Virus record (IMG/VR): IMGVR_UViG_3300027749_002876
Coordinates: 434,001-498,000 of that record
Reading direction: 5' to 3' (one strand)
DNA: 64,000 bases
The notes beneath the pieces are model-generated. The model had not been told where the DNA came from and ran no database searches. It saw only the letters and a list, made by a program, of their open reading frames with translations. Shown one piece after another: positions 4,496 through 21,283 of this stretch (position 1 is the stretch's first letter; each line of letters starts with the position of its first letter). Position numbers and translations under genes: made by a program.

Positions 4496-5233
4496 TTATA
4501 AACCAAATCTTGCTTTGTTAGCATTCCAGCTGGTAGTAACTCCTGACTGACCAATAGCATTATCATATACTTTGACAATGGCCAATCGGCCGCCCCAGAA
4601 CCCACCTGAATCCCAACGAGTCATCAATCCATACCCGATTCCAGGGTTGGCAGCGGCACCGGGTGGAGCATTGGCCGTCTGTACCAGGGTGTTGTTTACA
4701 TACAAGTTGAGAGTAGTGCCATTAAATGTGCCCACAATCTGATACCAGGCACCGGGTGTTAGTGAGTACCCAGACGGAGTAGTTTGAAATCCCGCACTAT
4801 AATACCATGCCTGTAAATCAGTATCAGCACCGTTGGCACCCAGTCCAAGATTGATAGTGCCGCCGCCGTATGGGTATTCTGTGAATATGTTGGGGCCAGC
4901 AGAAGTATTAGTACCATCATAGTAATGCCACGCTTCAATACTCCAGTTAGCAAGTGTACCTAAGTTTGTAGGGCTGGCTGCATACTGTCCTGAACCAGGA
5001 TCGAACTGTATGTATCCACCGTTGGCACTGTTGTATGTGGGACCATTAACAAGAGTAAATGTCATTGATCCAATGGTGTCAGTCCAGGTAGAGTAGCCCC
5101 CTGCTCCAGGATAACTTGCAGGGTTGCCTGCATCTAAACTCAACAATAAGTTCGCAACAGGGCCTGCGCTACCTATGTCGATACCGCCCCCGATATCTAT
5201 TCCTTCGCCTATTCTTATTCCCGGTGCTACCAT
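4496..5233 (-). CDS. LamG/concanavalin-A-like domain protein with Gly-patterned N-terminal leader
   Basis: LLLSLDAGNPASYPG, WSIEAW, WYQIVGTFNGTTLNLYVNN, WNANKARFGL; N-term GIRIGEGIDIGGGIDIG. Confidence 0.85.
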   Translation of the reverse strand: MVAPGIRIGEGIDIGGGIDIGSAGPVANLLLSLDAGNPASYPGAGGYSTWTDTIGSMTFTLVNGPTYNSANGGYIQFDPGSGQYAASPTNLGTLANWSIEAWHYYDGTNTSAGPNIFTEYPYGGGTINLGLGANGADTDLQAWYYSAGFQTTPSGYSLTPGAWYQIVGTFNGTTLNLYVNNTLVQTANAPPGAAANPGIGYGLMTRWDSGGFWGGRLAIVKVYDNAIGQSGVTTSWNANKARFGL

Positions 5234-5270
5234 GTTATACCCTTTTGTCTATTTAACTTATAACTAACTT

Positions 5271-6776
5271 TTATAGTTTTGTATAACCATAACTAACAAC
5301 AGCGTTAGCACCGCTGTTGTTAGTGATACCAAATGTAAATACATTGGCTGTGTTGCCTGAGTAAGGTGCCGCATTGCTAATTACACCCTGTGTTCCAACA
5401 AACTGATTTGGTATTGATGTAAGTACTAATGCATTTCCTGCTAAATAATACCAACCATATTGTTCACCTAGCACTGGTACATTTGTATTTGTAACGACCG
5501 CAGTAGCAGTATATGTTATAATACCGTTTGGAATATTACCGTTAATCCAAATTGAGTAAGTGCCACTTGTTGGAACATTAATATTCGCTGTGTTAACTCC
5601 AGGTGTAAGTGTCCAATTACCTGTTGTTTGTGTAGGAATACCAGTAAGTTGACTTCCATTACCAATAAAGTTGTTAGCAGTCACATTCCCTGCAACGCTT
5701 ATTGTGTTACCGTATGTAACTTCTTTGCTAGTAGCATTGTAGAACATAACTTCAGCAATATTTGAAGTATCATTGCGGACTGGTGATACTGTGAATGTAT
5801 TGGCTGTTGTTTGATCCAACGGATTACCAGTAGCATTCAATATGATTGAATTGTTGCCTTGATTAACGTTACCAGCTTTTGCACCAATTGCTATAGATTG
5901 CTGACCTTGGCCTTGATTACCGGCCTTAAAGCCAATAGCTATTGCTTCAATACCTTGTATATTAGCTCCAGTGTCTGTACCAATGGCCACTGCGGCTTGG
6001 CCTTGACCATTACCACCAGCACCTGCTCCAATTGCTATTGAAATAAAACCCTGGTTGTTTTCGCCTGCGTCAATTCCAATTGCTACTGCACTATTGCCTT
6101 GCGTGTTTGAGCCAGCATTTTGACCTATAGCTAGTTTTGTAGGCCCATTAGTATTGTTAATATTACCAATATTAGCCCAGTCCGTGTTACCACCAAAGCC
6201 ACCTGTATAAGCAGTGGTTTGAACTGAACTATCAGGGAATGATATACTACCGTTAGCATTAAAGTCCCATAGATTAGGACCACTGTTGCCACCATTTTGT
6301 CCTACTGCTATTCTAACAATACCTGACCCTACTGTAGGATTGGTATATACTGCCGCTATGTTACTACTGCCGATACCGCCGATATTTTCTACCCAGAGAC
6401 TTGATGTACCACCGTTACTACCACTTGATATTGATAGTAATGGTAGATCAGGATTCGATTGTAATAATGCAACATTTGATCCAAATACACTAGTGTTGCC
6501 TGTTATTACAAGATTACCCGGGATAGTTAAGTTACCAGTATTGTCAAAACTCCAAGTGCTTGTATTAGCAGTAATTTGAGTTGTATTAGGAGAAGTAATA
6601 CTTACCGAAACATTACCTTGGAGCACGAGGCTAGTATCTTCATAAACTGATGAATCACCGGACCAAGTAATACTTTGAGATATGTTCATAGCATATACAT
6701 TTGCGATATTACCCGTAATGTTTCCTGCTGTAGTAAATCCACCGTCTGATGTGATTGGTATTAAATTTGCTGACAT
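5271..6776 (-). CDS. tail-fibre/adhesin-like protein with YadA-head-like 14-aa repeats
   Basis: G/N/T-rich; tandem AIAIG-xAG-xxQG repeats; WSFDNTGNLTIP motif shared with the next gene. Confidence 0.7.
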   Translation of the reverse strand: MSANLIPITSDGGFTTAGNITGNIANVYAMNISQSITWSGDSSVYEDTSLVLQGNVSVSITSPNTTQITANTSTWSFDNTGNLTIPGNLVITGNTSVFGSNVALLQSNPDLPLLSISSGSNGGTSSLWVENIGGIGSSNIAAVYTNPTVGSGIVRIAVGQNGGNSGPNLWDFNANGSISFPDSSVQTTAYTGGFGGNTDWANIGNINNTNGPTKLAIGQNAGSNTQGNSAVAIGIDAGENNQGFISIAIGAGAGGNGQGQAAVAIGTDTGANIQGIEAIAIGFKAGNQGQGQQSIAIGAKAGNVNQGNNSIILNATGNPLDQTTANTFTVSPVRNDTSNIAEVMFYNATSKEVTYGNTISVAGNVTANNFIGNGSQLTGIPTQTTGNWTLTPGVNTANINVPTSGTYSIWINGNIPNGIITYTATAVVTNTNVPVLGEQYGWYYLAGNALVLTSIPNQFVGTQGVISNAAPYSGNTANVFTFGITNNSGANAVVSYGYTKL

Positions 6777-6797
6777 TTTTATTTTTCCTTATTCTTA

Positions 6798-9700
6798 TTA
6801 ATCTTGTGGTATACCAAACTCTGTTGCATCGTATGTTATATAAGCTGGTTTAGAGCCTGAGTTAATTGTTAATGTAATCTGCATAACACCTGAACCATTC
6901 AAGTTAACCAACACAGTAGTATCTGTGATTGTAGGTGGCTTAAGTCTATTACTTACTGAGTAATAAGTATCACTACCTGTATAGGTCGCTGACACATCAA
7001 ACATCTCAATTCTGAATCCTGAGTGTTGAACTTGAACCGTTACTTTCATTGAAGTTATTGCACTACTAGTTGCAGTGTACACTACAGTTGGGTCCGGGAA
7101 AGCACTATTAATAATTGCGCTCCAATGGTATGGTGGAATAATCTTACGCTGACTACGGATTGTAGTCTGCTCGGTCAATCCAACATCTAATACAGTAACT
7201 GGTAAGGTCAAGTTACCATCTGCACCAAATGTCCAACCTTGAGTTGTTCCACCAGTATTAGCACTAATATACACATCTGTATTAGCATACAGTTGTATCG
7301 TGTCTTTCTGAAGGTACAAGGCTGTTGTATCATTATTAGTAGTACCAAGATATGCTGTGTTAGGGCCATCAGTAACCATATCAAGTCGAGAATACCCTGC
7401 TCCAACTATAGCTTTTGGTACAGTCAAGTTACCATCAGAAACAAAGTTCCATATATGGAATGTAGACGGGCTAACTGAAGTAATAGCTACATTAGCCGGT
7501 ATAGTAGTACCTACTACTGAAGGGAATACCCAATCACCTACTACAGTATTTCCATTACTATCACATGGTCGAAGTGAAAATGTATTTGGACTACCTGGGA
7601 ATTGTACATATACATAAGTGTTAAGTTGCGTGGTGCTACCATTAGACCATGTTGTAGCAACTATTGTTTCTGGCGCTATGCCGGCTGTAACTAATGCATT
7701 ATATAAAGTACTATCAGTAAATATAATTTTTGTAAATCCAGTATTGTTATATGTATTACCAACTATTGATCCAGGACTTGCTACCACTGCATTAGCTAAG
7801 TCACTAACTTGTATAGTAACTCCACCGTCGTAACTTACTTCTGCATTATTTTTTATAGTGCTGTTAGCTGGTAATGTTAAGTTACCATCCACACCAAATG
7901 TCCACTGTGCTGAGTTGCTGATGAAATCAGAAGTACCAATTTTTACGTTGCCGTCAGCTTCCAGTTTTACAAACTTGCTGTCGTCGCCAAAGTATTGATC
8001 GTAATAACGGTTGTTGCCCGTATCTAAATGTATGTGTGAAGCAACATCACCACCACGAACTCTTAAGTATTGTAGATTTGCTGTGCTGTCTAGTCCAGGA
8101 GCTAGATACAATCCGCCACTGCCATCATTGCTTCCGGTGCCTACTACCACTTGGTCGTCAAATGTCACATTACCTGTGTTAGCACCACCGCCTCCACCAT
8201 ATGGGCTACCATTAGCATAGTTGATGCTAGGAGTTCCTGTGGGTAATGTTAGATTACCATCTATGCCAAATTTCCACTCATTATCGGTTGATGTGTTATT
8301 ATTAAAATGCCGTATCGTAAATCCTACATTACTGGTATATGCCCAAGTATAATAATCACTACCATCGTAGGGATTACCATTTCCTATGTTGCCATTCCAA
8401 TATAATTGTGCAAATCTGGTGTTCCCACCGGCATTCAAACTTGCGACATTACTAGAGTCCGAAATAGTGGCATCATTTGGTAATGTTAAGTTACCATCTC
8501 CGCCAAATGTCCAAACACCACCTTGAGTATTAGTATTAACATCCCAAGACTGTATATAAACATTGCCGTCCCAACTTGTCATTACATTAGATTGCTCGTC
8601 TTTACCTAATATAAGATTTGCACTTGCGCTAGCAACAAGGTGAATGTCTGGACCAGATGATATGAAGATATCTAAATATGAACCAGCGTTAGCAGGATCT
8701 GGTTGTAAGTTTAAGTTACCTGTGCCAATGATATTAATGTCATTGAATGTGATATTACCTGTGTTAGCATTGCCACCACCGCCATATGGACTACCATTAG
8801 CGTAATTGATACTTGATGTATTACTTGGTAATGTTAGATTGCCGTCACCGCCAAATGTCCAAGCATTACCGTTTGAAATAATAGATGAATTGTTTGCTAT
8901 GGTTCCAATATAAAGTGCTTCAGCAAGTGTACCTGAATTTGCAACTTGTAGCAACAACTCTGTGCCCGGAATTAAAGTTAGTGGATCAGTACTTGGTGTA
9001 AAGTTACCAGTGTAAACTGCTGTACCAACAACATAACGCATATTTGTTATTAAACCAACGTACTGCGAATTTATACTTTCAGTACCTGTTGTACCATCTA
9101 CTGTTGGGCTACCGATGCTTAGGAAATAACCGTTTGCAGGATCGTAAGCAATATCATCTGGTATGGAAACAGAATTAAATGCTACACCGTCCTGATAGAT
9201 AGTTACTGTACCTGATGAACGAACTACAGCAATATGTTGCCAAACGTTTAATGTATTATTCCAACCAGAGAAGGGATTATAACCAGATTGTGTCTGTATT
9301 GCTATATTGTTAGAGCCACCTTCAAATAACCCCACTAACAAACTATTAATGTTACCACAGCAAATACCAAGACTGAATGGTCTTGGATATCCATGACCAT
9401 CGCTAGTTACATATTGATACCATTCAATGGTAAAGTCACCTGTGCCAGGAGCAAATCTTGCTTCATTGGGTACTACTAAGAAATGATTTAATTCGTCACC
9501 TGCGAATTCTAAACTACCACCACTACTTAATGGAGAAGCACTATTATAGGCAACGTTGCCTATATTGTTCATTGTGACAGATATATTTCCTGTAGTACTA
9601 GAATAAGGTAATGTTAGGTTACCATCTGTGCCAAATGCCCATTGATTGCTGTTAGTTCTGTCACTGACAACAAAATTATTATCACCATTTCCAAGAATAC

Positions 9701-11294
9701 CAAAATCCCATTGTTGGGTAGCATTGGATTGATCTTGCACTGACAAGTAAGCACTGCGTGGTGTGTTATAAAAAACGTTGTCTGCATATCCAGTTATTTG
9801 AATAGCGGGCCCAGCAACAATTCCAAAGTCAGTGCTTTCTACTCTAGGTGCAAGTATTTGCATGTAAGGTGAGTAATCAACCCGTTGTTGATATGCGTTA
9901 GTTCCATTCAATGTTGGCATTCCATTGCTGTCAAACTGTAGTGTACTATAGGTATCTCCGGGTGTGCCGCCTTGATTAGAGAAATTTCCTTGCCAGTTGA
10001 ACTGTGCTGCACCAGAACTTCCAGCCGGAGTACCTAATGGTACTTGTGTACCGTTGGCATAGTTAACAGCAAATGTATTAGCAGGTAATGTTAAGTTACC
10101 ATCAGCATCAAATGTCCATGTATGTGAGTTAGCACTATAATTTGTACCAATATATGCATTGCTAGCATCTACCCACATCCAAGTGTTTTCGGGGTTACCA
10201 CTGTTTGGACCAATTGTGATACCAGTATAATTTAACTCACCGGTACCAGGTACACCCCGTAGAGTTGATCCATTGATAATACTTTGATCGGGGAGATGAA
10301 GAACACCGTTTGTATCTAAGTTTAAGGTATAGTGTTGAGTAGGTTGAGTAAGATTTGTACTGTACAAGTTACTTGTACTGACTTGATTGTTGCTGTTAAG
10401 TACAAAACCATTGCCCAAAGCCATAATACCCGGTGTTGAGTTATTTGCAATGGGAACATTTTCACCTAATTGTACAGGATCACCGTTAGCATAATTGACA
10501 GCAAATGTATTGCTTGGCAATGTTAAATTACCACTAGCACTAAAATTCCATGTCTGTACATTTTGACTATTGCCAATATTACCTGCTAATAAAGTGATAT
10601 CGCCATATGTATTATATAATGATACTGCGTTACCGTCACCTTGTATAGGAATACTCATCCCTGCAGTTTGACCATTACCTAAATCTGAATTGTTTACAAC
10701 AACACCGCCGTTAGAATAAATGACATTGTTATCAAATCCTATGTTACCTAGACCAGGGCCACTTGAGACATTAGACCAAACTAATGCTCCTGAACCATTA
10801 GTACTTAACACTTGTCCATTTGTACCACCTTCAATGTGAACATTGGAAACATCACCTAAATTAGTAGCACCTATTACATTTAAATTGCCTGCACTTAAAT
10901 CACCATCATATGATGTTAAAAAGTCTGCAACATTACTATTACCATATGAATTATTATTTGTAACTTTGTAATTGTTAATTGTTTGATTGACAGCACTAAC
11001 AGAAATTTGTTTTTCAGTATTATATACTGTTACAATGTCATTGGAATCATTATTATTTGAAGATACAATAAACAGTTCAGTACCTGAACTAGCTTGTGTA
11101 GCTTGATTGTATGTTGTTGTATCTCCGGACGTTTTGGGAGCAATACCCCTAGTTACCGTACCACCAGTACTTGTTGCTGTACCATTAGCAGAAACTGTAG
11201 GGGGAGATGTTCTTGCTACTGAAGGTGTTTGATTTTCAAATGATTTTGCTAGTGCCGGATCAGCAGGTCCAACTAGTTTTGGTGATGTAGCCAT
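6798..11294 (-). CDS. large modular tail-fibre-like protein with embedded LamG domain
   Basis: 1498 aa; nine W-x-F-x-x-(D/S)-GNLT(L/V)P motifs separate unrelated modules; LamG segment FAPGTGDFTIEW...WQHIAVVRSSG. Confidence 0.8.
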   Translation of the reverse strand: MATSPKLVGPADPALAKSFENQTPSVARTSPPTVSANGTATSTGGTVTRGIAPKTSGDTTTYNQATQASSGTELFIVSSNNNDSNDIVTVYNTEKQISVSAVNQTINNYKVTNNNSYGNSNVADFLTSYDGDLSAGNLNVIGATNLGDVSNVHIEGGTNGQVLSTNGSGALVWSNVSSGPGLGNIGFDNNVIYSNGGVVVNNSDLGNGQTAGMSIPIQGDGNAVSLYNTYGDITLLAGNIGNSQNVQTWNFSASGNLTLPSNTFAVNYANGDPVQLGENVPIANNSTPGIMALGNGFVLNSNNQVSTSNLYSTNLTQPTQHYTLNLDTNGVLHLPDQSIINGSTLRGVPGTGELNYTGITIGPNSGNPENTWMWVDASNAYIGTNYSANSHTWTFDADGNLTLPANTFAVNYANGTQVPLGTPAGSSGAAQFNWQGNFSNQGGTPGDTYSTLQFDSNGMPTLNGTNAYQQRVDYSPYMQILAPRVESTDFGIVAGPAIQITGYADNVFYNTPRSAYLSVQDQSNATQQWDFGILGNGDNNFVVSDRTNSNQWAFGTDGNLTLPYSSTTGNISVTMNNIGNVAYNSASPLSSGGSLEFAGDELNHFLVVPNEARFAPGTGDFTIEWYQYVTSDGHGYPRPFSLGICCGNINSLLVGLFEGGSNNIAIQTQSGYNPFSGWNNTLNVWQHIAVVRSSGTVTIYQDGVAFNSVSIPDDIAYDPANGYFLSIGSPTVDGTTGTESINSQYVGLITNMRYVVGTAVYTGNFTPSTDPLTLIPGTELLLQVANSGTLAEALYIGTIANNSSIISNGNAWTFGGDGNLTLPSNTSSINYANGSPYGGGGNANTGNITFNDINIIGTGNLNLQPDPANAGSYLDIFISSGPDIHLVASASANLILGKDEQSNVMTSWDGNVYIQSWDVNTNTQGGVWTFGGDGNLTLPNDATISDSSNVASLNAGGNTRFAQLYWNGNIGNGNPYDGSDYYTWAYTSNVGFTIRHFNNNTSTDNEWKFGIDGNLTLPTGTPSINYANGSPYGGGGGANTGNVTFDDQVVVGTGSNDGSGGLYLAPGLDSTANLQYLRVRGGDVASHIHLDTGNNRYYDQYFGDDSKFVKLEADGNVKIGTSDFISNSAQWTFGVDGNLTLPANSTIKNNAEVSYDGGVTIQVSDLANAVVASPGSIVGNTYNNTGFTKIIFTDSTLYNALVTAGIAPETIVATTWSNGSTTQLNTYVYVQFPGSPNTFSLRPCDSNGNTVVGDWVFPSVVGTTIPANVAITSVSPSTFHIWNFVSDGNLTVPKAIVGAGYSRLDMVTDGPNTAYLGTTNNDTTALYLQKDTIQLYANTDVYISANTGGTTQGWTFGADGNLTLPVTVLDVGLTEQTTIRSQRKIIPPYHWSAIINSAFPDPTVVYTATSSAITSMKVTVQVQHSGFRIEMFDVSATYTGSDTYYSVSNRLKPPTITDTTVLVNLNGSGVMQITLTINSGSKPAYITYDATEFGIPQD

Positions 11295-11373
11295 TGAAGG
11301 GTCCTTTGTTATTATAGTAGTATTTAGTCTAACTATAATAAAGTTAGTCTGCTAATACTATAATAAAGACGGT

Positions 11374-13146
11374 TTATGCGAACACTGTGCCGTTATTTCC
11401 TATGCAGAACCATTTGCTATTTACATATTGTAGTGTACATGCACTACCCACAACACTGAAAGTCATTGTGCCAGCGCCACCCCATCCTGGATTGGTAACT
11501 GTAATAACCATATCCCCACCGTAGCCGTTCATCATAAATGTTTTAATTTGACCCGGTGCACCGGCAGCGAGTGTAGCGGTTTCAGCGGCTACTGTTGTAA
11601 AATAACTAGCTGTAACTAATAGATTTGCGGCTGCGGCATTTGCTAAATCTTCACCGCTGTTTAATAATAATATACCTGTAGTATTTAAATTACCACCGGT
11701 GATGTTACCAGTAGCAGTAATTACACCTGTACCAATGTTACCAACATTAGCATTACCTGATACACTTAAACTAGTTAATGTACCTGTACTTGTTATATTT
11801 GATTGTGCGGCTGTTGTTAATGAACCGGCTACTGTTGTAAACACACCTGCTGTTGCACCAATATTACCCACAGATATATTACCTGTAGTTGTAATTGTGT
11901 TACTTCCATAACTATTTAAAAATGTAGCAACTTGACTATTACCATACGCACCTGTAATATTACCGGCATTGATATTAGTTAACCCAGCACCGTTACCAAC
12001 AAATACACCACTAGTGGATGTAATGTTACCAGTAGCAACAATTAATCCACCGGTACCAATGTTACCTACGTTTGCATTACCAGTTACACTTAAACTGGTT
12101 AGTGTACCAACTGACGTTATATTAGCTTGAGCCGCTGTAGTTAATAAACCTGCAATATTGGTAGCACTTAGTGTATTGGTAGTTGTGTTAAATGTTAAAT
12201 TAGCACTAGCACCAAAATCATTTGCACTGTTAAATTGAATCTGTGTATTGGATCCTGCAGGTTGTTGCATATCTAATGGCGTACCATTAGCATAATAATA
12301 ATTATTAGTTTTGATTCCACCAACAACTGCATTGCCTGTAGTGATTAAATTACCACCAGTAATATTACCTGTTACTGATACAGTATTTGCTAAATCAACT
12401 GTTATAACACCAGACGATGTAATAGTTCCGCCCGTAACTGTTAATGTATTACTTGTAATTGTAATTCCAGTAACAGTACCGCCTGATGCTGTAGTAGAAA
12501 CAGTAACGTTGCCGTTACTACCGCTGACACTTATACCTGTACCGGCTGCAATTCTAGTAACACCCGTATTGGTAACAGTAATAGAACCTGCACTGGTAAT
12601 TGGACTATTGGTAACTAATATACCAGATCCAGGAGTAATACCTACACTTGTAACAGTTCCGGCAACTGTATTATTCGACACAGTAGTTACTCTACCGTAT
12701 GAATCTAATGTAACTGTGGGGTTAGTATAAGTACCAGGAGTGATTCCAGTTGCAGTAAGATTAAGAACAATATTACCTGCGCTTAATATAGGACTATTAC
12801 TAACTGTTAATGTGCTAGAAGAAACACCTACACTGCTTACTCCGCCCCCATTTCCACCACCGGTTGCAGTAATTAATATATTACCATTTGAACCAGTTAA
12901 GTTAATACTGCTATCACCTGCAGTTAAACTTAGTACACCGGTATTGGTAATAGTTATTGTATTAGTATTTGAATTGGTATTTGCGTCAATACCAGCATTG
13001 CCAATAAATGTGTTGTACGGGCTGGCACATGCAAATAATGTTGCAAAATTGTCTACTGTTTTATTGAATGCGGTGTATAATGAATCGCTGTTAGCGGATT
13101 CGTTTTGCAATCCCACCGCTATTATTTGTTGTCCGGAAATTGCCAT
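11374..13146 (-). CDS. fibre/baseplate-associated structural protein
   Basis: N-term QIIAVG-NESANSDSLYTAFNK--DNFATLF resembles the T4 gp9/gp10-type N-terminal motif; G/T/V-rich VTSVG repeats. Confidence 0.7.
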   Translation of the reverse strand: MAISGQQIIAVGLQNESANSDSLYTAFNKTVDNFATLFACASPYNTFIGNAGIDANTNSNTNTITITNTGVLSLTAGDSSINLTGSNGNILITATGGGNGGGVSSVGVSSSTLTVSNSPILSAGNIVLNLTATGITPGTYTNPTVTLDSYGRVTTVSNNTVAGTVTSVGITPGSGILVTNSPITSAGSITVTNTGVTRIAAGTGISVSGSNGNVTVSTTASGGTVTGITITSNTLTVTGGTITSSGVITVDLANTVSVTGNITGGNLITTGNAVVGGIKTNNYYYANGTPLDMQQPAGSNTQIQFNSANDFGASANLTFNTTTNTLSATNIAGLLTTAAQANITSVGTLTSLSVTGNANVGNIGTGGLIVATGNITSTSGVFVGNGAGLTNINAGNITGAYGNSQVATFLNSYGSNTITTTGNISVGNIGATAGVFTTVAGSLTTAAQSNITSTGTLTSLSVSGNANVGNIGTGVITATGNITGGNLNTTGILLLNSGEDLANAAAANLLVTASYFTTVAAETATLAAGAPGQIKTFMMNGYGGDMVITVTNPGWGGAGTMTFSVVGSACTLQYVNSKWFCIGNNGTVFA

Positions 13147-13170: not shown

Positions 13171-13497
13171 TCAATTAGGACTAAAGGAACTCCCGCAACC
13201 ACAGGTTGTTGCCGCATTTGGGTTAGATATTTTAAACTGTGATCCAGATAAATCTTCAACATAATCAATATTTGCATTAGTTAAATATTGTGCGGAAATA
13301 CTATCAACTAGTACGCTCATTGAGCCAGCTGGTATTTCAAAATCATCTTCGTTCTGTTCTTCATCAATAGTGAAACCATATTGCATTCCACTACATCCAC
13401 CACCTTGAACAAATACACGTATTTTAGCTTTAGGATTGTTCTCCTCAGCTAAGATATCGGATATTTTTGTTGTTGCGTTTTCAGTTATTGTTATCAT
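13171..13497 (-). CDS. erpA: A-type Fe-S carrier protein (ErpA/IscA family)
   Basis: [16 protein letters not shown] and CGCGSSF motifs. Confidence 0.92.
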
Positions 13498-13502
13498 GTA
13501 GA

Positions 13503-13533
13503 TATTTATGCGTTTTCACAAAAAACATAAATA
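13503..13533. promoter_or_regulatory. divergent pair of late-promoter-like TAAATA motifs
   Basis: TATTTA 13503-13508 (minus strand, 5 nt from erpA ATG) and TAAATA 13528-13533 (plus strand, before endonuclease). Confidence 0.6.
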
Positions 13534-13560
13534 AATTATAAGGAGTAAAGTCTAACTATT

Positions 13561-14331
13561 ATGGATAAAAAGTATAAATTTAGGGGTGAAAGAATTTCTG
13601 AAGCCAAAAGAATGAAACAATCAGAATTTTTAGACAGAGCCATTGCAGTGCATGGAAGTATATATGATTATTCTAACTCATTTTATGTGAATGCACATAC
13701 CAAAATAAAAATTGGTTGTTCATACCACGGAATATTTGAACAACGTCCGCACGATCATGTTAAGGGTAAAAATGGATGTCCGGCATGCGGTACAATTAAT
13801 AGAAGAAAAAACCATTCAAAACAAGCATTTGATAAATTTTTAATATTGGCAAAAAAAATACATCAAAACAAATATCAATACATTACTGAATCATATACCG
13901 GAATAAAAGATTTGATGGAAATAGTTTGTCCAATACATGGCGTATTTAAACAAAGTGCGGATGTTCATAAAAGAGGAAATGGTTGCCAAAGATGTGGCTC
14001 TGGTCCTATTTCAAATATGTCACGCCGGTGGCTTGATTCTTTGAATGTAATAGATCGAGAATACTGGATAATAATTAATGGAAAAAGATATAAAGTGGAT
14101 GGGTATGATATTAATTCAAATACTATTTACGAATTTTTAGGTGATTATTGGCATGGAAATCCAAAAGTACATCATCCGGAAAAAATTAATTCTCATAATA
14201 AACATACCTTTAAGGAACTTTATGAAGGTACTATTCTAAGATTAGAAACTTTTAAAAAAGCAGGATATAATTTAATTTTTGTATGGGAGAATGATTATTT
14301 AAACCCGCCTAACAATTCTTCCCTTGGATAA
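13561..14331 (+). CDS. free-standing putative homing endonuclease (two Cys/His Zn-ribbon repeats plus Vsr/PD-(D/E)xK-like domain)
   Basis: Two HG-F-Q---H--G-GC--C repeats; C-term [20 protein letters not shown]; opposite strand to neighbours. Confidence 0.7.
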
Positions 14332-14514
14332 ATCATACGGTGAAAATTCTATTGAAACTGTATCACCTAATAGAATTTTAATGTCGTGCTGTCGCATTTT
14401 ACCCGAAATATAACCAGTGACTGTGGATCCACTATTTAATTTAACTCTAAAAACAGCATTAGGTAATACGTCTATTACCTTGCCATCTATTCTAATACCT
14501 TCTTCTTTTGCCAT
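14299..14514 (-). CDS. infA: translation initiation factor IF-1
   Basis: MAKEEGI---G-V---LPNA-FRV-L...[27 protein letters not shown]. Confidence 0.95.
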
Positions 14515-14515
14515 T

Positions 14516-14908: not shown

Positions 14909-14940
14909 AATGTGTATGTCATAGTTATTAAACAGTTTCT

Positions 14941-14969
14941 ATTATAGCAGAGTATCTATTATTTGTCAA
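14941..14969 (-). promoter_or_regulatory. sigma70-type promoter driving the 130-aa gene and infA
   Basis: Minus strand TTGACA 14969-14964, 17 nt, TATAAT 14946-14941. Confidence 0.85.
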
Positions 14970-14972
14970 ATT

Positions 14973-15449: not shown

Positions 15450-15631
15450 AGTTTTTTAAGTATAATTCTGCCTTTATCATCAATTGAAAAGTCAATATCA
15501 TCTCCCTCTTTCCAACCCAATTGTTTTAATAAACTTGGTGGAATAGGTATAAGCATGTCGCCAGTGTCTGGATCTTCTTGTGTGATAACTTCATAGCTAT
15601 CATAACTCTGTGCTGGATTTTTTTTAGGCAT
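15446..15631 (-). CDS. AbrB/MazE/SpoVT-like DNA-binding protein
   Basis: IPIP--LLKQLGWKEGD-I-F-----RIILKK. Confidence 0.8.
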   Translation of the reverse strand: MPKKNPAQSYDSYEVITQEDPDTGDMLIPIPPSLLKQLGWKEGDDIDFSIDDKGRIILKKL

Positions 15632-15634
15632 ATA

Positions 15635-16195
15635 TTACTTATTCTGTAGATAGGGTCTGTAAATCTTTTCTAATTCATTAATGGTATGTTGCGTATTGCC
15701 ATCTTCATGTTTAACTGCAATACCACCTGCGTTACTCCAAAGATTCAAATACTTACCATAGTCATCTACCAATACATTTGGCTCACCATTACTCAATGCG
15801 TATTTGTGTTTATGTTGTGTAAAGATAGCATCACGTGTAGCACTAGGATTGTGTTCATCTAACCAGTCTTTTTTAGCCTCTACACTGGCTTTGGCATATG
15901 GTCCACGTAATGGTGCACTTAATACTGTATACGGAATGTTATTTTGATTTAACCATTGTACTACTTTGTTTCCACCTTCTAGAGGTTTAAGTTCTCTAAA
16001 AAACTTATATACTTCTTCAGGGCTACTCGTAGCTAACTCATTGATTGATGTTTCAGTATCAGGAATCTCTTTGTAATTACCAACATTATGTTTTGCCGCC
16101 CAAGCTCCAAAAAAGTCAGCCTGTACTCCATCCATATCTAAGTATAGATGTGGCATTTTTTTGTTTGTATCTTCCATCAATTCATTAAGTTTCAT
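15635..16195 (-). CDS. HAD-family 5'(3')-deoxyribonucleotidase
   Basis: LYLDMDGVQADF, VLSAP, LVDDYGKYL--W---GG-A. Confidence 0.85.
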   Translation of the reverse strand: MKLNELMEDTNKKMPHLYLDMDGVQADFFGAWAAKHNVGNYKEIPDTETSINELATSSPEEVYKFFRELKPLEGGNKVVQWLNQNNIPYTVLSAPLRGPYAKASVEAKKDWLDEHNPSATRDAIFTQHKHKYALSNGEPNVLVDDYGKYLNLWSNAGGIAVKHEDGNTQHTINELEKIYRPYLQNK

Positions 16196-16202
16196 TTAGT
16201 TA

Positions 16203-16739
16203 TTATATCACAAATGGTAGAATAAGCCAAATGCCTTGGGTCAATAGTATTGTTCCAAAAATACTAACACCAATGCTTCCCCAAAACATACGCTTACTCA
16301 CAGCCAGTATACTAGCGGAAAGTAATACAATAGCTAACTGAAATGCCATACCAGCAAATGTTAACCATGGTGTATGTTTTTTGGCATCATCACGTTCACT
16401 TTCAATCTGTAATGCTTTAGCCATTAATTCTTTCTTACCTTCACCTTTAGCAGGGTCACTTTCATAGCGGTCAATTTTAGCTTGTAATTGTTCTCTACGC
16501 TTTGAGTCTTTAGCATCTTCTAATTGCCCTTCAGCAATACTTTGCTTGATACTTTTAGCTTGATAAAAGTTCCAAGTGTCATTTGCTTTGATAGTATTGG
16601 TTAGTATCTTGCTACTATATCCATTGGCTACATATGTTGTTACTGCTAATAATAATGCTATGACAGTAATGACCCATCCTGCTCTATCTTTGATTTGTGC
16701 CTCACGTTCACTGCGTGACAGTGGTTTTACTTCTACCAT
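16203..16739 (-). CDS. DUF4337-like membrane protein
   Basis: Three hydrophobic segments; ANDTWNFYQAKSIKQ; FQLAIVLLSASIL. Confidence 0.75.
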   Translation of the reverse strand: MVEVKPLSRSEREAQIKDRAGWVITVIALLLAVTTYVANGYSSKILTNTIKANDTWNFYQAKSIKQSIAEGQLEDAKDSKRREQLQAKIDRYESDPAKGEGKKELMAKALQIESERDDAKKHTPWLTFAGMAFQLAIVLLSASILAVSKRMFWGSIGVSIFGTILLTQGIWLILPFVI

Positions 16740-16765
16740 TTTATTTCCTTTTGAATATTTATAGT

Positions 16766-17518
16766 TTATGGGTGCAAGGTGCTATAGGTAACTGCACCAG
16801 CGTTTGTAACTGTGAGAGCATTATTACTCGTATCAGTTATATAAGTACCAGCAGATGCAACTGCTAACAATAATTGAGTTGAAGTGCCTGTGATTGTCGC
16901 ACTAGGTGAACCGTTGATATTGGCGCTTTGTGTAGCAGTTAGAGGCGTAGTTGACGGTGTAAAGTTTGAAGTATAAACTGCCAGCCCCTTAACAATTCTC
17001 ATGCTGGTCATGTAACCATTGAATGGGTTATTGTTTTGATTGGCACTCCATCCAATTTCTAAACTTCTATTGGTGTTGGAATTATACACACTGGTAGAAG
17101 TCAATACCGAGATGCCACCCACATACACTGTGACTGTGCCACTGGCCCTAACCAAAGCAACATGTTGCCATATTCCTGCTGTGACAACTCCATCGGAACT
17201 ACCAGGGTATGCACTGCCACTATAATAATTGAGTTTGCCATTATTGTTGAGATCAAGATTGTCACTATTGGATCCAAACCACCATAATCTTTGACTTACA
17301 GTGACTGACGTAGGATTTATCCAAGTTTCTACGGTATAATCACCGGTGCCAAAAGCAAATGCAGACCCTGCTGTAACAGAAGAAATTACTAATTCATTAT
17401 TGGCACCTGCGTTAGTTCCATTAAAAAATAAACTGCCGGTAAATGAAGAAATACTATCAGTAGTTAATGAAATGCCTGGTCCAATGTTAATTCCTCCACC
17501 AATTTGTATTCCTGCCAT
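16766..17518 (-). CDS. stand-alone LamG-domain protein with Gly-patterned N-terminal leader
   Basis: FGTGDYTVETW, WQHVALVRASG, GLAVYTSNFTPSTTPLT; N-term GIQIGGGINIGPGISL. Confidence 0.85.
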   Translation of the reverse strand: MAGIQIGGGINIGPGISLTTDSISSFTGSLFFNGTNAGANNELVISSVTAGSAFAFGTGDYTVETWINPTSVTVSQRLWWFGSNSDNLDLNNNGKLNYYSGSAYPGSSDGVVTAGIWQHVALVRASGTVTVYVGGISVLTSTSVYNSNTNRSLEIGWSANQNNNPFNGYMTSMRIVKGLAVYTSNFTPSTTPLTATQSANINGSPSATITGTSTQLLLAVASAGTYITDTSNNALTVTNAGAVTYSTLHP

Positions 17519-17604
17519 TTTATTTCCTTTGTTATGACTTATGCTATTTGATTAAACTTAATCAATTAAATATATATTTATACACAATCAAAAGGAGCAT
17601 ACCA

Positions 17605-17766
17605 ATGAGTTGGTTCAAGCACAAACCCAGAACAAAAACACCCCCAAAATTACATGTATATCATACAAGTCCTATAGCAGAAAAACTATTAAAAGAGACA
17701 AAACTTGAAGTCACTGGTGTAAAAGCCAAGTTAGCAGAAGTAGAGAAAAAGAAAAATGAACGGTAG
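17605..17766 (+). CDS. small basic hypothetical protein, 53 aa
   Basis: AAAGGAG RBS before ATG 17605 (track start 17548 is likely too long). Confidence 0.55.
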   Translation: MSWFKHKPRTKTPPKLHVYHTSPIAEKLLKETKLEVTGVKAKLAEVEKKKNER

Positions 17767-17929
17767 AGAACTACAACAAATGTATCAACAATGGTGTCAA
17801 GGAAATGATGATTACAATTTTCGTTGGTTAGATTTTGTTGAGATGGCCGCAAGACAGTTTCAGCAACCTGAAAGTGAAGTCATTAGAGAGTTACAGAAAC
17901 ATTATTGGTTTGTAAAAAACAATAAGTAG
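17756..17929 (+). CDS. hypothetical protein, 57 aa, not in the ORF track
   Basis: MNGRELQQMYQQWCQGNDDYNFRWLDFVEMAARQF...; fills the gap. Confidence 0.55.
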   Translation: MNGRELQQMYQQWCQGNDDYNFRWLDFVEMAARQFQQPESEVIRELQKHYWFVKNNK

Positions 17930-17938
17930 ATTTATTGA

Positions 17939-17944
17939 TAAATA
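17939..17944 (+). promoter_or_regulatory. late-promoter-like TAAATA; further copies at 18904, 20136 and 20887 precede other genes of this cluster
   Basis: TAAATA in four successive intergenic gaps; resembles the T4 late promoter TATAAATA. Confidence 0.6.
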
Positions 17945-17968
17945 CTACTATATTATAGGATTAACATT

Positions 17969-18874
17969 ATGGAATTCAGTGGAATGACAATAAGTGGTGG
18001 GGTTTCTATTGTGCCTCCCCCTCCCTCAAATAAGGCTATATTTGGTTATGGTTATCCCACCTATTCAATAACTAACTTAGTATCAATCACAGGTGTAGTT
18101 GCTACTAATACAACTGGTGTTGGTACCGGTAGACATGGTTTAGCAGCCGCAACTTATGGTACTGATAAAGCTATATTTGGTTATGGTAATGACACTAATA
18201 TCAGGCTATCAATGACCAATCTTGTATCAAATACAGGTGTAGTTGCTACAGATACAACAGGTGTTGGTACTGCTAGAAATAATTTAGCAGCCACAGGTTA
18301 TGGCACTGATAAAGCTATTTTTGGTTATGGATATATTGGCTCAGCTACATCAATAACTAATCTAGTAAGTAATGCAGGTGTAGTAGCAACTGATACTGCA
18401 GGTGTTGGCACTGCTAGGTACGCAAGAGCAGCCACAACTTATGGCAGTTCTGGACAAGCTATATTTGGATATGGTAATGGTCCTGTATCAGTAACCAATC
18501 TAGTATCAAGTACAGGTATAGTAGCTACTGATACAACCGGTGTTGGTACCGCTAGATCCGACCTTGCTGCCGCAGGGTATGGTACCGATAAAGCTATTTT
18601 TGGATATGGCGCCACTAGCAGTAATACTGCAATAACTAATCTAGTAAGTAACACCGGCGTAGTCGCAACTGACACAACAGGTGTAGGCACTGCTAGGAGT
18701 AGTCTAGCAGCCGCGGGGTATAGTAGTGATAAAGCTATTTTTGGATATGGTGATAATTCAGGTGCTTTATCAATGACCAATCTAGTAAGTAATACCGGTG
18801 TTGTTGCTACTGATACTGCAGGTGTCGGTACTGCTAGATTGGCGTTAGCAGCCGCAAGTTACGGCCTCAGTTAA
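17969..18874 (+). CDS. six-blade Kelch-like beta-propeller repeat protein (paralog A)
   Basis: Six copies of (K/Q)AIFGYG-loop-xxTNLVSxxGxVATxTxGVGTxR-xx-xAAxxYG; ends with the closing strand LAAASYGLS. Confidence 0.75.
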   Translation: MEFSGMTISGGVSIVPPPPSNKAIFGYGYPTYSITNLVSITGVVATNTTGVGTGRHGLAAATYGTDKAIFGYGNDTNIRLSMTNLVSNTGVVATDTTGVGTARNNLAATGYGTDKAIFGYGYIGSATSITNLVSNAGVVATDTAGVGTARYARAATTYGSSGQAIFGYGNGPVSVTNLVSSTGIVATDTTGVGTARSDLAAAGYGTDKAIFGYGATSSNTAITNLVSNTGVVATDTTGVGTARSSLAAAGYSSDKAIFGYGDNSGALSMTNLVSNTGVVATDTAGVGTARLALAAASYGLS

Positions 18875-18931
18875 AAATACAATTAACTTATTAGAGTTAG
18901 AGATAAATACATTATCATAAAGGAGAATATA

Positions 18932-19147
18932 ATGATAGACTTAGAAAACATGCCTGCTCCAACACAAGAGCAAATCGCAGAAGCAAGAGAAAACGCATTC
19001 AATGCAGAGCATCCAGCATCATGGACATGGAATGAAGAAGCAACTTCATATGTTGCTCCAGTAAGTGTTCCAAATGATGGCTATCCTTATTTATGGGATG
19101 AAGCTACAACTAATTGGACACCATTTCCAGATTATCCTAGAGAGTAA
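18932..19147 (+). CDS. small Trp/Pro-rich protein (possible fibre-assembly accessory)
   Basis: HPASWTWNEE----VAP--VP-DG-PYLWDEATTNW; strong AAGGAG RBS. Confidence 0.7.
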   Translation: MIDLENMPAPTQEQIAEARENAFNAEHPASWTWNEEATSYVAPVSVPNDGYPYLWDEATTNWTPFPDYPRE

Positions 19148-19153
19148 TCTTTA

Positions 19154-20101
19154 ATGCAATTCAGTGGAATGACAATATCGGGTGGGATAACGGTAGTTTA
19201 TATCCCTCCTCCCTCAAACAAGGCTATATTTGGATACGGCGTCAATAATGCCGATAGTATGGTTTCAATTACAAACCTAGTATCAAACACTGGTGTTGTT
19301 GCGACTGATACTGCAGGTGTCGGTACTGGTAGGCGAAACCTAGGCGGTGCAGGTTATGGTACTGATAAAGCTATCTTTGGATATGGGCAAACTAGTAGTT
19401 TATTATTCTCACTGACCAATCTTGTAAGTAATACAGGAGTAGTTGCCACAGATACAGCAGGTGTTGGTACTGCTAGAAGTAATCTTGCGGCTGCTGGGTA
19501 TGGTGGTGATAAAGCTATATTTGGATATGGGGCAAATCTCAATCAAGATGTGATGTATTCATTAACTAATTTGGTATCAAACACTGGTGTAGTTGCTACA
19601 GATACTACAGGCGTTGGTACTAGTAGATTCCAACTGGCAGCCGCAGGTTATGGTACTGATAAAGCTATCTTTGGATATGGGTACAATAGTAGTTTTACTC
19701 CACTTTCAATTACTAACCTAATAAGTAATACCGGTGTAGTTGGTAATGATGTTACTGGTGTTGGAACTGCTAGAACTGCACTAGCGGCTACTGGATATGG
19801 CACTGATAAAGCTATTTTTGGATACGGATACGCAGGAGGCGTTCAATCAATAACTAACCTAGTATCAAATACAGGCGTAGTGGCCAGTAATACAACAGGT
19901 GTAGGTACTGCTAGATATAACCTTGCGGCCGCAGGTTATGGTGTTGATACTGCTATTTTTGGATATGGAGTTGGTCCTGCAAGTCCACCGTATCTATCAA
20001 TGACCAACCTAGTATCAAACACAGGGATAGTCGCAACAGATACCACAGGTGTAGGTACTGCTAGATACGGATTGGCAGCCGCTAGTTACGGGTTATCATA
20101 A
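19154..20101 (+). CDS. six-blade Kelch-like beta-propeller repeat protein (paralog B)
   Basis: Six copies of the same repeat; same N-terminal leader FSGMTISGG. Confidence 0.75.
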   Translation: MQFSGMTISGGITVVYIPPPSNKAIFGYGVNNADSMVSITNLVSNTGVVATDTAGVGTGRRNLGGAGYGTDKAIFGYGQTSSLLFSLTNLVSNTGVVATDTAGVGTARSNLAAAGYGGDKAIFGYGANLNQDVMYSLTNLVSNTGVVATDTTGVGTSRFQLAAAGYGTDKAIFGYGYNSSFTPLSITNLISNTGVVGNDVTGVGTARTALAATGYGTDKAIFGYGYAGGVQSITNLVSNTGVVASNTTGVGTARYNLAAAGYGVDTAIFGYGVGPASPPYLSMTNLVSNTGIVATDTTGVGTARYGLAAASYGLS

Positions 20102-20170
20102 ACCCTAAAAATTTTTACTCACACAAATTAGCTAATAAATATCTCTATACACAACCTATAGAGAGAAAAA

Positions 20171-20839
20171 ATGGCATCAAATCTAAATTCAGAATTTAAC
20201 TACCGTTACCAGGTGATCGGTTCAACACCCTGGGAAAAAATCAAAACACTTCAAGGCTTCTATGTAGGTCGCAAACGAGCGGCCGTACTAGAAGAAGTGG
20301 CTGAATTAAAATATCAAGCTAAACTTGAAGAACTAAAACATCTAAAAACAGTTCCAGCACTACCGCATATTATGCTTAATCTACAAGCAGAAATCATTGA
20401 GTTGGAATCACACTTGGATGACCAAAAACATGCTTTCGAACTTAATCGCAAAGAGATTAAAATATTAGAAAAATACATGGCTGAACTTTATGCTGAAGTT
20501 GAACCAACAAGACTTAAGCATCCAGATGGTACACCGTATACCGATGATGAGATGTTTGAAGCTAATGCTAACTATGAATTCACAGTCACAGTTGGTCGTG
20601 AGATTCAATCGGAAATCATTGCAATGGGTAGACCTAGTCCAGCTAAACTACTCAATGCTATGAGTAATCCACAAACATTAAATTCATTAATGCAAATTGG
20701 TCTTGTACCACAAGGTACTATATTACTAGAGCAGAAAGATATTATGTTAGAATTAACTAATCAATCAACTACAACAGTAATGGATGCACCAAAAGAATTA
20801 GAAAGTAACACTTCTAAGAAGAAAACAAAGAAAAAGTAA
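20171..20839 (+). CDS. coiled-coil hypothetical protein
   Basis: 222 aa, helical heptad pattern, basic C-terminal tail. Confidence 0.75.
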   Translation: MASNLNSEFNYRYQVIGSTPWEKIKTLQGFYVGRKRAAVLEEVAELKYQAKLEELKHLKTVPALPHIMLNLQAEIIELESHLDDQKHAFELNRKEIKILEKYMAELYAEVEPTRLKHPDGTPYTDDEMFEANANYEFTVTVGREIQSEIIAMGRPSPAKLLNAMSNPQTLNSLMQIGLVPQGTILLEQKDIMLELTNQSTTTVMDAPKELESNTSKKKTKKK

Positions 20840-20861
20840 TAGTATAATACTTACAGAAAAG

Positions 20862-20884
20862 AGGCTCACTATGAGCCTTTTTTT
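20862..20884 (+). terminator. intrinsic terminator
   Basis: AGGCTCA-CTA-TGAGCCT followed by a T run. Confidence 0.8.
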
Positions 20885-20911
20885 GATAAATAAGTTGAAG
20901 GAAGATATATT

Positions 20912-21283
20912 ATGTCAATAACGATAACAGGTGGTTTTACATTGGCTGGTGGTGGATGGACTGTTGCTCCCGCACCACCTACAGGTAATAAAGCTATCTT
21001 TGGATACGGTAGCAATGGATCTAATGTGTCAATGACTAACCTAGTAAGTAATGCAGGTATTGTTGCTGCTGACACTACTGGAGTAGGTACTGCTAGACGT
21101 TATCTAGCAGCCGCAGGTTATGGTACTGATAAAGCTATATTTGGTTATGGAACTATTGCTGGTAATCTTGGGGATACCTATTCACTAACTAACCTAGTAT
21201 CAAACACGGGTGTAGTAGCTACAAATACTGCTGGTGTAGGTACTGCCAGATACAGCCCTTCGGCTGCAGCCTACAGCTCATAA
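20912..21283 (+). CDS. two-blade Kelch-like repeat protein (paralog C)
   Basis: Two KAIFGYG repeats plus closing strand PSAAAYSS; own TAAATA upstream. Confidence 0.7.
   Translation: MSITITGGFTLAGGGWTVAPAPPTGNKAIFGYGSNGSNVSMTNLVSNAGIVAADTTGVGTARRYLAAAGYGTDKAIFGYGTIAGNLGDTYSLTNLVSNTGVVATNTAGVGTARYSPSAAAYSS

What the first reader, a model, noticed from the sequence alone, without database searches (positions are those of the whole stretch)
4496..21283. Shared Gly-patterned N-terminal leader on five genes with different payload domains
Seen: N-termini MVAPGIRIGEGIDIGGGIDIG (LamG, 5233), MAGIQIGGGINIGPGISL (LamG, 17518), MEFSGMTISGGVSIVPPPP (17969), MQFSGMTISGGITVVYIPPP (19154) and MSITITGGFTLAGGGWTVAPAPP (20912). 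All alternate hydrophobic residues with Gly and are not signal peptides; three are followed by a Pro linker. Inference: a common docking peptide of about 20 aa that plugs interchangeable adhesin domains into the same sites on the virion, functionally like Hoc/Soc display.
Basis: partly seen in the sequence, partly recalled or inferred. Interest (0 to 1): 0.68.

Follow-up and report, generated by a model that had tools for sequence, protein, structure and literature searches.

The report
Shared N-terminal tag on phage lectins
A 524-kb T4-like freshwater phage puts the same ~18-residue glycine-patterned N-terminal tag on 23 sugar-binding-type proteins of four architectures, most likely as an address that fastens swappable adhesins to the virus particle, though the docking site is still unknown.

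Summary
The window lies in a 524,565-bp IMG/VR T4-like jumbo phage. A profile of the leader finds 23 genes genome-wide. Every match starts at Met-1 and none is internal. The payloads are 17 beta-propeller lectin-like proteins, single and triple LamG proteins, and Gly_rich_2 with or without FN3.

The leader is two to three G-phi-x-phi-x-G hexads, usually followed by a Pro or Gly linker. It lacks K/R and any long hydrophobic run, so it is not a signal peptide. It is under purifying selection. Identical payloads carry different leader subtypes in other contigs, so it is an exchangeable module.

Among 1.84 billion protein representatives only 14 match, and 13 of those start at residue 1. AlphaFold leaves the leader unpacked from the LamG core. 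In 80 gp13 loci all 12 leader genes sit directly upstream of gp13, the T4 wac slot, in about 15% of relatives. Adjacency to the capsid gene is sporadic.

Best reading: a lineage-specific N-terminal docking address for accessory adhesins, analogous to the conserved docking peptides of branched receptor-binding proteins. Neither a partner nor a Hoc/Soc-like capsid site is shown.

The parts
4496..5233 (-). Leader-LamG gene (245 aa). It is the last gene after three long fibre genes, a gp38-like position.
   Evidence: Translation; PF13385 E=3.7e-18; leader HMM E=2e-4 starting at Met-1.
5171..5233 (-). Leader of that gene: three GIxIGx hexads (21 aa).
5271..13146 (-). Three fibre-like genes (501, 1498 and 590 aa) upstream of the leader-LamG gene on the same strand. 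This is structural context.
   Evidence: repeat-rich Gly/Ser/Thr/Asn sequences; internal LamG in the 1498-aa protein.
16766..17518 (-). Leader-LamG gene (250 aa).
   Evidence: PF13385 E=6.7e-18. AF2 LamG core pLDDT 80-97, leader 56-59 with no secondary structure. Foldseek to CBM/pentraxin/sialidase lectin domains and to phage tail, baseplate and structural proteins.
17465..17518 (-). Leader of that gene (18 aa, GIQIGG GINIGP GISL).
17969..18874 (+). Leader, PPPP linker and six-repeat beta-propeller lectin-like protein (301 aa).
   Evidence: Profile hit to Photorhabdus PLL/PHL propeller lectins, E=1.1e-6. More than 2,293 metagenomic homologues.
17969..18025 (+). Leader (15 aa) plus PPPP linker of that gene.
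18932..19147 (+). Conserved 71-aa companion gene of the cassette. Its orthologue lies just upstream of gp13 in T4-sized relatives.
   Evidence: Weak phrog_7759 hit; orthologues in L023, L025 and L026.
19154..20101 (+). Leader, PPP linker and six-repeat propeller lectin-like protein (315 aa).
20171..20839 (+). Highly conserved 222-aa core gene embedded between leader genes. A paralogue at genome 171714-172379 is flanked by leader genes in the same way.
   Evidence: 2 copies; 3,726 homologues at 87-100% identity; lies in the wac-slot cassette of relatives.
20912..21283 (+). Leader, APAPP linker and a two-repeat propeller fragment-sized protein (123 aa).
   Evidence: also present in another sample's contig.

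Best explanation
The leader is an autonomous N-terminal address module. It consists of two to three G-phi-x-phi-x-G hexads (about 15-21 aa). These probably form short amphipathic beta-strands joined by Gly-Gly turns, with one conserved hydrophobic face and one variable polar Thr/Ser/Asp face. In 18 of 23 genes a Pro(2-4) or poly-Gly spacer follows.

It tethers interchangeable carbohydrate-binding-type heads to the virion of a lineage of uncultured freshwater T4-like phages. Heads seen are a PLL-like beta-propeller, LamG, Gly_rich_2 with or without FN3, and elsewhere SPRY. Docking would be onto a structural partner, probably through fold-on-binding or beta-augmentation.

The proteins are optional accessory adhesins. 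They are gained and lost as cassettes at hot spots in the structural modules.

Shown: modularity, restriction to Met-1, selection on the peptide, lectin-type payloads, structural-gene context, and absence of signal-peptide or cleavage features.

Inferred: virion attachment, the beta-hairpin conformation, and the site. My ranking of sites is neck/collar or the fibre network ahead of the capsid.
For: - 23 genes carry the leader; all hits start at Met-1 and none is internal. Enrichment over chance is more than 20-fold.
- One genome has four payload architectures behind one leader. Other contigs add more: LamG+SPRY, four copies of Gly_rich_2, a phrog_4474-type protein and a second propeller-like repeat.
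- All 17 propeller genes and all 4 stand-alone LamG genes of the genome carry the leader.
- The same conserved triple-LamG payload carries at least 6 different leader subtypes in other contigs.
- Within subtypes, leader pN/pS is 0.28 against 0.42 for the payload. A pair with unrelated payloads differs in the leader by 6 synonymous changes and 1 non-synonymous change.
- In the exhaustive profile search of 1.84e9 representatives, 13 of 14 hits start at residue 1 and all true hits are on these payloads.
- AF2 gives a confident LamG core with the leader and linker not packed on it.
- Payloads resemble lectins and phage tail, baseplate or structural proteins. In other phages the same propeller is the C-terminal module behind long fibre-type N-domains, including Mtd_N.
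- Context: all 12 leader genes found in 80 gp13 loci lie in the slot directly upstream of gp13. Others lie after MCP plus a homing endonuclease or after long fibre genes.
- T4-sized relatives use a different short N-module (RASGLWPTS-type) on the same kinds of payloads in the same slot. Neither genome set shows the other's module. This matches lineage-specific docking peptides (PMC6872550; PMC13352976).
Against: - No partner is identified.
- No T4 gp10-like branching domain is detectable by sequence. Only the N-terminal gp9/10 motif is found, below the Pfam cut-off.
- At least seven leader subtypes coexist with as little as 18-36% identity. This is hard to reconcile with one socket unless recognition is of the pattern or backbone.
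- Some leader genes lie among non-structural genes.
- Upstream late-promoter-like motifs are not significantly enriched: 9/23 against 99/442, p=0.08.
- There are no proteomic, structural or expression data.
- The within-subtype pN/pS is biased low, because subtypes were defined by leader similarity.
Confidence: 0.5

Rival explanations
1. One reading: the leader docks all payloads into the same sites on the capsid lattice, as a Hoc/Soc-like display.
For: - Four leader genes follow MCP plus a homing endonuclease in G000. A related phage (MCP 94% identical) has leader genes with other payloads in the same slot.
- T4 hoc also lies a few kb downstream of gene 23, after segD and gene 24.
- The genes are dispensable, like hoc and soc.
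- No Hoc homologue occupies that role in G000.
Against: - Only about 3 of 40 informative MCP loci in relatives have a leader gene after MCP.
- Most leader genes lie elsewhere.
- Many leader subtypes coexist.
- Hoc binds through a C-terminal domain (general knowledge), so this would be analogy only.
- No capsid contact was tested.
Confidence: 0.15
2. The leader is a self-association tab, for example three amphipathic beta-meanders forming a small trimeric plug. It would make multivalent lectin bouquets rather than recognise a partner directly.
For: - The conserved hydrophobic face and variable polar face, together with free drift into many subtypes within one genome, fit a self-complementary core.
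- Fibre proteins are usually trimers (general knowledge).
- The 123-aa two-blade protein could need three copies to make a six-blade propeller, by analogy with two-repeat trimeric propeller lectins (my own knowledge).
Against: - The three-copy co-fold scored 0.02, which the tool states is no evidence either way.
- Self-association alone does not explain strict Met-1 placement, or how the proteins would join the virion.
- Propeller and LamG lectins do not need oligomerisation to fold.
Confidence: 0.15
3. The shared 5' end is mainly a duplication or recombination footprint, a handle for cassette exchange, without peptide function.
For: Tandem paralogues share near-identical 5' UTRs and leader DNA. 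Leader pS (0.33) is lower than payload pS (0.52). Payload swapping is frequent.
Against: - Synonymous differences accumulate while the peptide is kept, with up to 6 synonymous changes against 0-1 non-synonymous.
- The Gly/hydrophobic pattern is conserved across subtypes whose DNA has diverged.
- The motif is never internal.
Confidence: 0.05
4. The leader is an export or targeting signal that is removed: a secretion signal, or a T4-type capsid-targeting propeptide cut by the prohead protease.
For: It is an N-terminal, short, shared sequence on unrelated proteins, as with the T4 internal-protein targeting sequences (general knowledge). A gp21-like protease is present.
Against: - K/R count is 0.09 per 20 aa against 2.24 in other genes.
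- The longest hydrophobic run is 3 residues or fewer.
- Only 1 of 23 has an [LI]-x-E site.
- The payloads are surface-type lectin domains on rigid Pro linkers, not internal proteins.
Confidence: 0.05

Closest known systems
Conserved N-terminal docking peptides of secondary receptor-binding proteins. These occur in K1E/K1-5/SP6, Klebsiella KP32/KP34, and the Menlow and PhiK64-1/RaK2 groups. They bind a T4 gp10-like branching domain or an adaptor (PMC6872550), and the interaction was validated experimentally (PMC13352976).
   Same: - A short peptide at the extreme N-terminus, shared by several proteins with different C-terminal specificity domains.
- It differs between phage groups.
- The multi-RBP sets include jumbo myoviruses.
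- The modules swap by recombination.
   Different: - The sequence is unrelated: Gly-patterned hexads, against for example MALxxLV.
- The payloads are small lectin-type domains, not trimeric depolymerase tailspikes.
- There are 23 carriers and at least 7 subtypes in one genome.
- No branching domain or adaptor has been found, and binding is untested.
T4 fibritin (wac) with its N-terminal anchor at the neck/collar
   Same: A non-essential accessory fibre gene lies directly upstream of gp13. Leader genes occupy exactly that slot. Attachment through the N-terminus is the known rule for wac (general knowledge).
   Different: - There is no sequence relationship. The wac N-terminus scores -1.5 bits, rank 74 of 332 background N-termini, and the T4 genome search was empty.
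- Fibritin is a long coiled coil with a roughly 50-aa anchor.
T4 Hoc/Soc and other capsid decoration proteins. These include lambda gpD, whose N-terminal strand augments a capsid sheet (my own knowledge).
   Same: They are dispensable surface proteins that display binding domains. The gpD precedent shows that a short N-terminal strand can dock by beta-augmentation.
   Different: There is no homology to Hoc. Hoc binds through its C-terminus. A capsid location is not supported by consistent gene context.
T2/S16-type gp38 adhesin capping the long tail fibre tip (my own knowledge)
   Same: A small adhesin gene is encoded last after the long fibre genes, as for window 4496-5233 after the 590-, 1498- and 501-aa genes. 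Both have a glycine-rich character.
   Different: Different fold and attachment domain; homology was not tested.
Photorhabdus PLL/PHL beta-propeller lectins (payload only)
   Same: The repeat profile matches at E=1.1e-6 over several blades.
   Different: There are six repeats here, not seven. Sugar binding is untested, and the AF2 model of the propeller is poor (pLDDT 53).

Membership tests
RBP docking-peptide / branching-domain system | A short conserved peptide at the N-terminus of several proteins with different distal domains | tested here: met
   23 genes, all at Met-1, with four architectures.
RBP docking-peptide / branching-domain system | A primary RBP or adaptor carrying a T4 gp10-like branching domain | tested here: inconclusive
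   Only the gp9/10 N-terminal motif is found, at 17.9 and 16.7 bits, below the cut-off. T4 gp10 matches over residues 2-77 only. No profile-profile search was available.
RBP docking-peptide / branching-domain system | The peptide is required for incorporation of the protein into the virion | not testable with these tools
   This needs genetics or biochemistry. The three-copy co-fold of the leader gave no verdict.
RBP docking-peptide / branching-domain system | The peptide is specific to a phage group | tested here: met
   The Gly leader occurs in jumbo relatives and an RASGLWPTS-type module in T4-sized relatives. No overlap was seen in the DNA examined. The leader is absent from 50,697 phage records.
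Hoc/Soc capsid decoration | Homology to Hoc | tested here: not met
   T4 Hoc against G000 found nothing at E<=1. Soc was not tested.
Hoc/Soc capsid decoration | Binding to the MCP lattice | not testable with these tools
   A hexamer is too large for the complex tool. Gene adjacency to MCP is sporadic.
Fibritin (wac) N-terminal anchor | Sequence similarity to the wac anchor domain | tested here: not met
   -1.5 bits, rank 74 of 332, and no hit in the T4 record.
Fibritin (wac) N-terminal anchor | Gene located immediately upstream of gp13 | tested here: met
   12 of 12 leader hits in 80 gp13 loci lie there.
Sec/Tat signal peptide | A positively charged n-region and a hydrophobic h-region of at least 7 residues | tested here: not met
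   K/R 0.09 per 20 aa; longest hydrophobic run 3 or fewer.
T4-type capsid-targeting propeptide | A prohead-protease [LI]-x-E site after the leader | tested here: not met
   Found in 1 of 23.
Laminin_G_3 / ConA-like lectin (payload) | Pfam match above the gathering score, and the fold | tested here: met

The most novel reading that the evidence does not exclude
The leader is a universal plug: a roughly 18-residue, three-strand amphipathic beta-meander that docks by beta-augmentation onto a repeated, conserved site of the virion (neck collar or capsid lattice). Recognition would be of the backbone and pattern rather than of side chains. One particle could then carry a combinatorial coat drawn from more than 20 lectin genes, and cassettes could be exchanged freely between phages. 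That would be a natural, minimal phage-display tag.
Probability: 0.15. Interest if true: 0.8.

Novelty: new variant of a known kind. Interest (0 to 1): 0.55.

Why it matters
If the tag is a docking address, it explains how a huge, abundant freshwater phage lineage fields and reshuffles dozens of sugar-binding adhesins. It also gives a very small natural tag for attaching cargo to phage particles.

The finding defines an unannotated, searchable sequence family. It flags the wac-equivalent slot upstream of gp13 as a hot spot for adhesin cassettes. And it shows a parallel, unrelated N-module in sister phages, which suggests that short lineage-specific address peptides are a general design rule beyond Klebsiella and coliphage tailspikes.

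Tried and rejected
1. Fibritin-anchor homology. T4 wac really starts MTDIVLNDLPFVDGPP, which resembles subtype MADIVFSGVNFSGG. It scores -1.5 bits on the leader HMM, rank 74 of 332 background N-termini, and the leader profile finds nothing in the T4 genome. Rejected; only the positional analogy is kept.

2. Co-fold of three leader copies. Score 0.02, no verdict. This is evidence neither for nor against.

3. AF2 of the 301-aa propeller with 28 close homologues. pLDDT 53, so it was not used for fold claims.

4. phrog_7759 small gene as a general partner. There are only 2 copies in the genome. It accompanies Gly_rich_2 genes in L010, L011, L015 and L003, not the leader as such.

5. The 222-aa neighbour as docking hub. 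It is about 90% conserved across phages whose adhesins use entirely different N-modules, so it is unlikely to be the leader's socket. Not tested by folding.

6. Late-promoter enrichment upstream of leader genes. 9/23 against 99/442, p=0.08, not significant.

7. PDB sequence search with the leader profile. No hit at E<=10.

8. MCP adjacency as a rule. It fails in most relatives.

9. T4 gp10 and Hoc searches of the genome. Only the N-terminal gp9/10 motif was found, and no Hoc.

Full report
**What the window is.** The window is bases 434001-498000 of a single 524,565-bp contig with 36.7% GC. It is an IMG/VR virus record that CheckV rates as complete.
- It has a T4-type major capsid protein (Pfam Gp23, E=4e-99) and no NCLDV capsid.
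- It has a canonical portal, protease, scaffold and MCP block.
- It has gp13-like, gp14-like and gp15 neck genes.
- It is therefore a T4-like jumbo myophage from freshwater metagenomes. Thousands of near-identical gene copies occur in public assemblies.

**Observation.** The five quoted N-termini are exactly as described.
- Both minus-strand genes are LamG.
- The three plus-strand genes share a roughly 47-aa repeat, KAIFGYG...TNLVSNTGVVATDTTGVGTAR...LAAAGYG, present six times (twice in the 123-aa gene).
- A profile of that repeat matches the Photorhabdus PLL/PHL beta-propeller lectins at E=1.1e-6.

**Genome-wide count.** A leader HMM finds 23 genes, each hit starting at the first Met, with no significant internal hit.
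- A loose regex gives 18 N-terminal hits against 0.5-0.85 expected.
- The payloads are 17 propellers, 2 single LamG, 2 triple LamG, one Gly_rich_2 and one FN3/Gly_rich_2/FN3 protein.
- Every propeller gene and every stand-alone LamG gene in the genome carries the leader.
- One triple-LamG copy lies in a 4,089-bp, 99.6% duplicate that ends the contig. It may be an assembly or terminal duplicate.

**Anatomy.** The consensus is M-x-[IV]-T-[IV]-T-G-G-phi-T-phi-S-G-G-phi-T-phi-x-x-P, which is two to three G-phi-x-phi-x-G hexads.
- Hydrophobic positions and glycines are conserved. The alternating positions vary among T, S, D, N, Q and R.
- My inference is short amphipathic strands joined by tight Gly turns, with one buried face.
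- Eighteen of 23 leaders are followed by two or more Pro, or four or more Gly.
- The leaders almost lack K/R (0.09 against 2.24 per 20 aa). Their longest hydrophobic run is 3 or fewer. Only 1 of 23 contains a T4 protease-type [LI]-x-E site.
- They are therefore neither signal peptides nor T4-style cleaved targeting sequences.
- At least seven subtypes coexist, some only 18-36% identical to each other.

**Is it a functional module?** Four results say yes.
- Paralogues with identical leader peptides differ at synonymous sites.
- Pooled within-subtype pN/pS is 0.28 for the leader against 0.42 for the payload. This is biased low, because subtypes were defined by leader similarity.
- Two genes with unrelated payloads (Gly_rich_2 and triple LamG) differ in the leader by 6 synonymous changes and 1 non-synonymous change.
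- In other contigs the same highly conserved triple-LamG payload is headed by at least six different leader subtypes. Several of these sit on propellers in this genome.
- AF2 models the 250-aa LamG protein with a confident core (pLDDT 80-97). The leader (56-59, no secondary structure) and linker (below 50) stay unpacked, so the leader is not part of the payload fold.

**Distribution.**
- No Pfam, PHROG or PDB family covers the leader.
- An exhaustive profile search of 1.84 billion representatives gives 14 hits at E<=1e-3, and 13 start at residue 1.
- All true hits are on the propeller, the triple LamG, or a second propeller-like repeat (AGWFGGG...RITFATDTATA). The one internal hit is an unrelated SBBP-type repeat.
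- Back-translated patterns hit only 14 IMG/VR contigs. These add LamG+SPRY, four copies of Gly_rich_2, a phrog_4474-type protein and a 177-aa payload.
- None of 50,697 sequenced phage records has the leader or the propeller. BLAST's low-complexity filter is a caveat for the leader queries.
- The short profile limits sensitivity, so narrowness is a lower bound.

**Payload biology.**
- In most metagenomic homologues the propeller is the C-terminal module behind long, fibre-type N-terminal domains, one of them with Mtd_N.
- The LamG model matches carbohydrate-binding modules, pentraxins and sialidase lectin domains in the PDB. Among viral models it matches tail, baseplate-wedge and structural proteins.
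- These are adhesin-type heads.

**Context.** Leader genes lie in at least seven places.
- In the window, the LamG gene 4496-5233 is last after three long fibre genes.
- The block 17969-21283 is homologous to a cassette of [222 aa]-[propeller]-[propeller]-[71 aa]. In T4-sized relatives this cassette sits directly upstream of gp13-gp14-gp15, the position of wac in T4.
- In G000 itself, two leader-propeller genes sit directly upstream of gp13.
- In a sample of 80 gp13 loci (1,074 ORF N-termini), all 12 leader hits fall in that one slot, in about 15% of relatives. The others have nothing or a different gene there.
- Four leader genes follow MCP plus a homing endonuclease in G000. A 94%-MCP relative has leader genes with other payloads in the same slot. 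Only about 3 of 40 informative MCP loci repeat this.
- So these are optional cassettes at structural hot spots. The neck slot is the reproducible one.

**A parallel system.**
- In the T4-sized relatives, the propellers and two other payloads carry a different short N-module, RASGLWPTS-type.
- G000 has none of these, and those loci have no Gly leader.
- Only 12.7 kb per relative could be examined, because the larger records were not searchable.
- Lineage-specific short N-terminal peptides on swappable heads are what has been described, and now validated, for branched receptor-binding proteins (PMC6872550; PMC13352976).

**Mechanism and limits.**
- I conclude that the leader is most likely a docking address that folds on a virion partner.
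- The partner is unknown.
- No gp10-type branching domain was detected by sequence.
- No Hoc homologue is present.
- The fibritin anchor is not homologous.
- The multiplicity of subtypes fits either several sockets, pattern or backbone recognition, or a self-associating tab.
The claims of same sites and Hoc/Soc-like capsid display are not.

Noticed in passing
L025 5104-8520; L026 4562-8658: T4-sized relatives carry a different shared short N-terminal module (...[QR]RASG.WPTS...) on a Gly-rich 278-aa protein, a 425-aa protein and two propeller lectins, just upstream of gp13. This is a second address-peptide family, parallel to the Gly leader.
   Followed up: partly
G000 164523-169151(-) and 362645-371143(+) (L001, L005): Four long fibre proteins (681-1785 aa) share another N-terminal motif, MA-x-x-PF-x-x-V-x-G-[FL]-S-V-G. 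It is possibly a separate attachment tag for long fibres, and it scores weakly (8-9.5 bits) on the leader HMM.
   Followed up: no
G000 172924-177012 and 520477-524565 (L001, L006): A 4,089-bp repeat at 99.6% identity runs exactly to the contig end. It includes the 5' part of the triple-LamG leader gene. It could be a real duplication, terminal redundancy or an assembly artefact.
   Followed up: partly
L003 9363-10247 (G000 275363-276247): A Gram-negative porin gene (PF13609, E=5e-21) with a signal-peptide-like N-terminus lies inside a run of seven leader genes in the phage genome.
   Followed up: no
window 13171-13497(-), 14299-14514(-), 35901-37847(-), 38107-39309(-): The phage encodes an IscA/HesB-type Fe-S scaffold (PDB hit E=1.5e-33), translation initiation factor IF-1 (E=2e-22), a full Hsp70/DnaK (PF00012, E=1.5e-255) and a ClpX-like ATPase.
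   Followed up: partly
window 6798-11294(-): The 1498-aa fibre protein has about nine W-T-F-G-x-D-G-N-L-T-L-P repeats and an internal LamG domain. The repeat loosely resembles the leader's G-G-L-T-F-x-P, but it is not detected by the leader HMM.
   Followed up: no
window 20912-21283(+): This 123-aa protein has the leader plus only two propeller repeats and is conserved in another sample's contig. It could form a six-blade propeller as a trimer, as two-repeat lectins do (my own knowledge), or it could be a truncated paralogue.
   Followed up: no
window 3656-4492(-): A papain-family C1 peptidase (PF00112, E=9e-18) lies immediately downstream of the leader-LamG gene, at the end of the fibre operon.
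   Followed up: no
L010 2229-3331; L011 2172-2522; L015 11321-12423; L003 6666-7031: Small phrog_7759 proteins (116-129 aa) sit next to leader-Gly_rich_2 genes in four contigs. They may be a payload-specific assembly factor.
   Followed up: partly
L005 10776-11756 (G000 356776-357756): A homing endonuclease lies between MCP and the leader cassette, as segD follows gene 23 in T4. Such elements may help to create the cassette hot spot.
   Followed up: no
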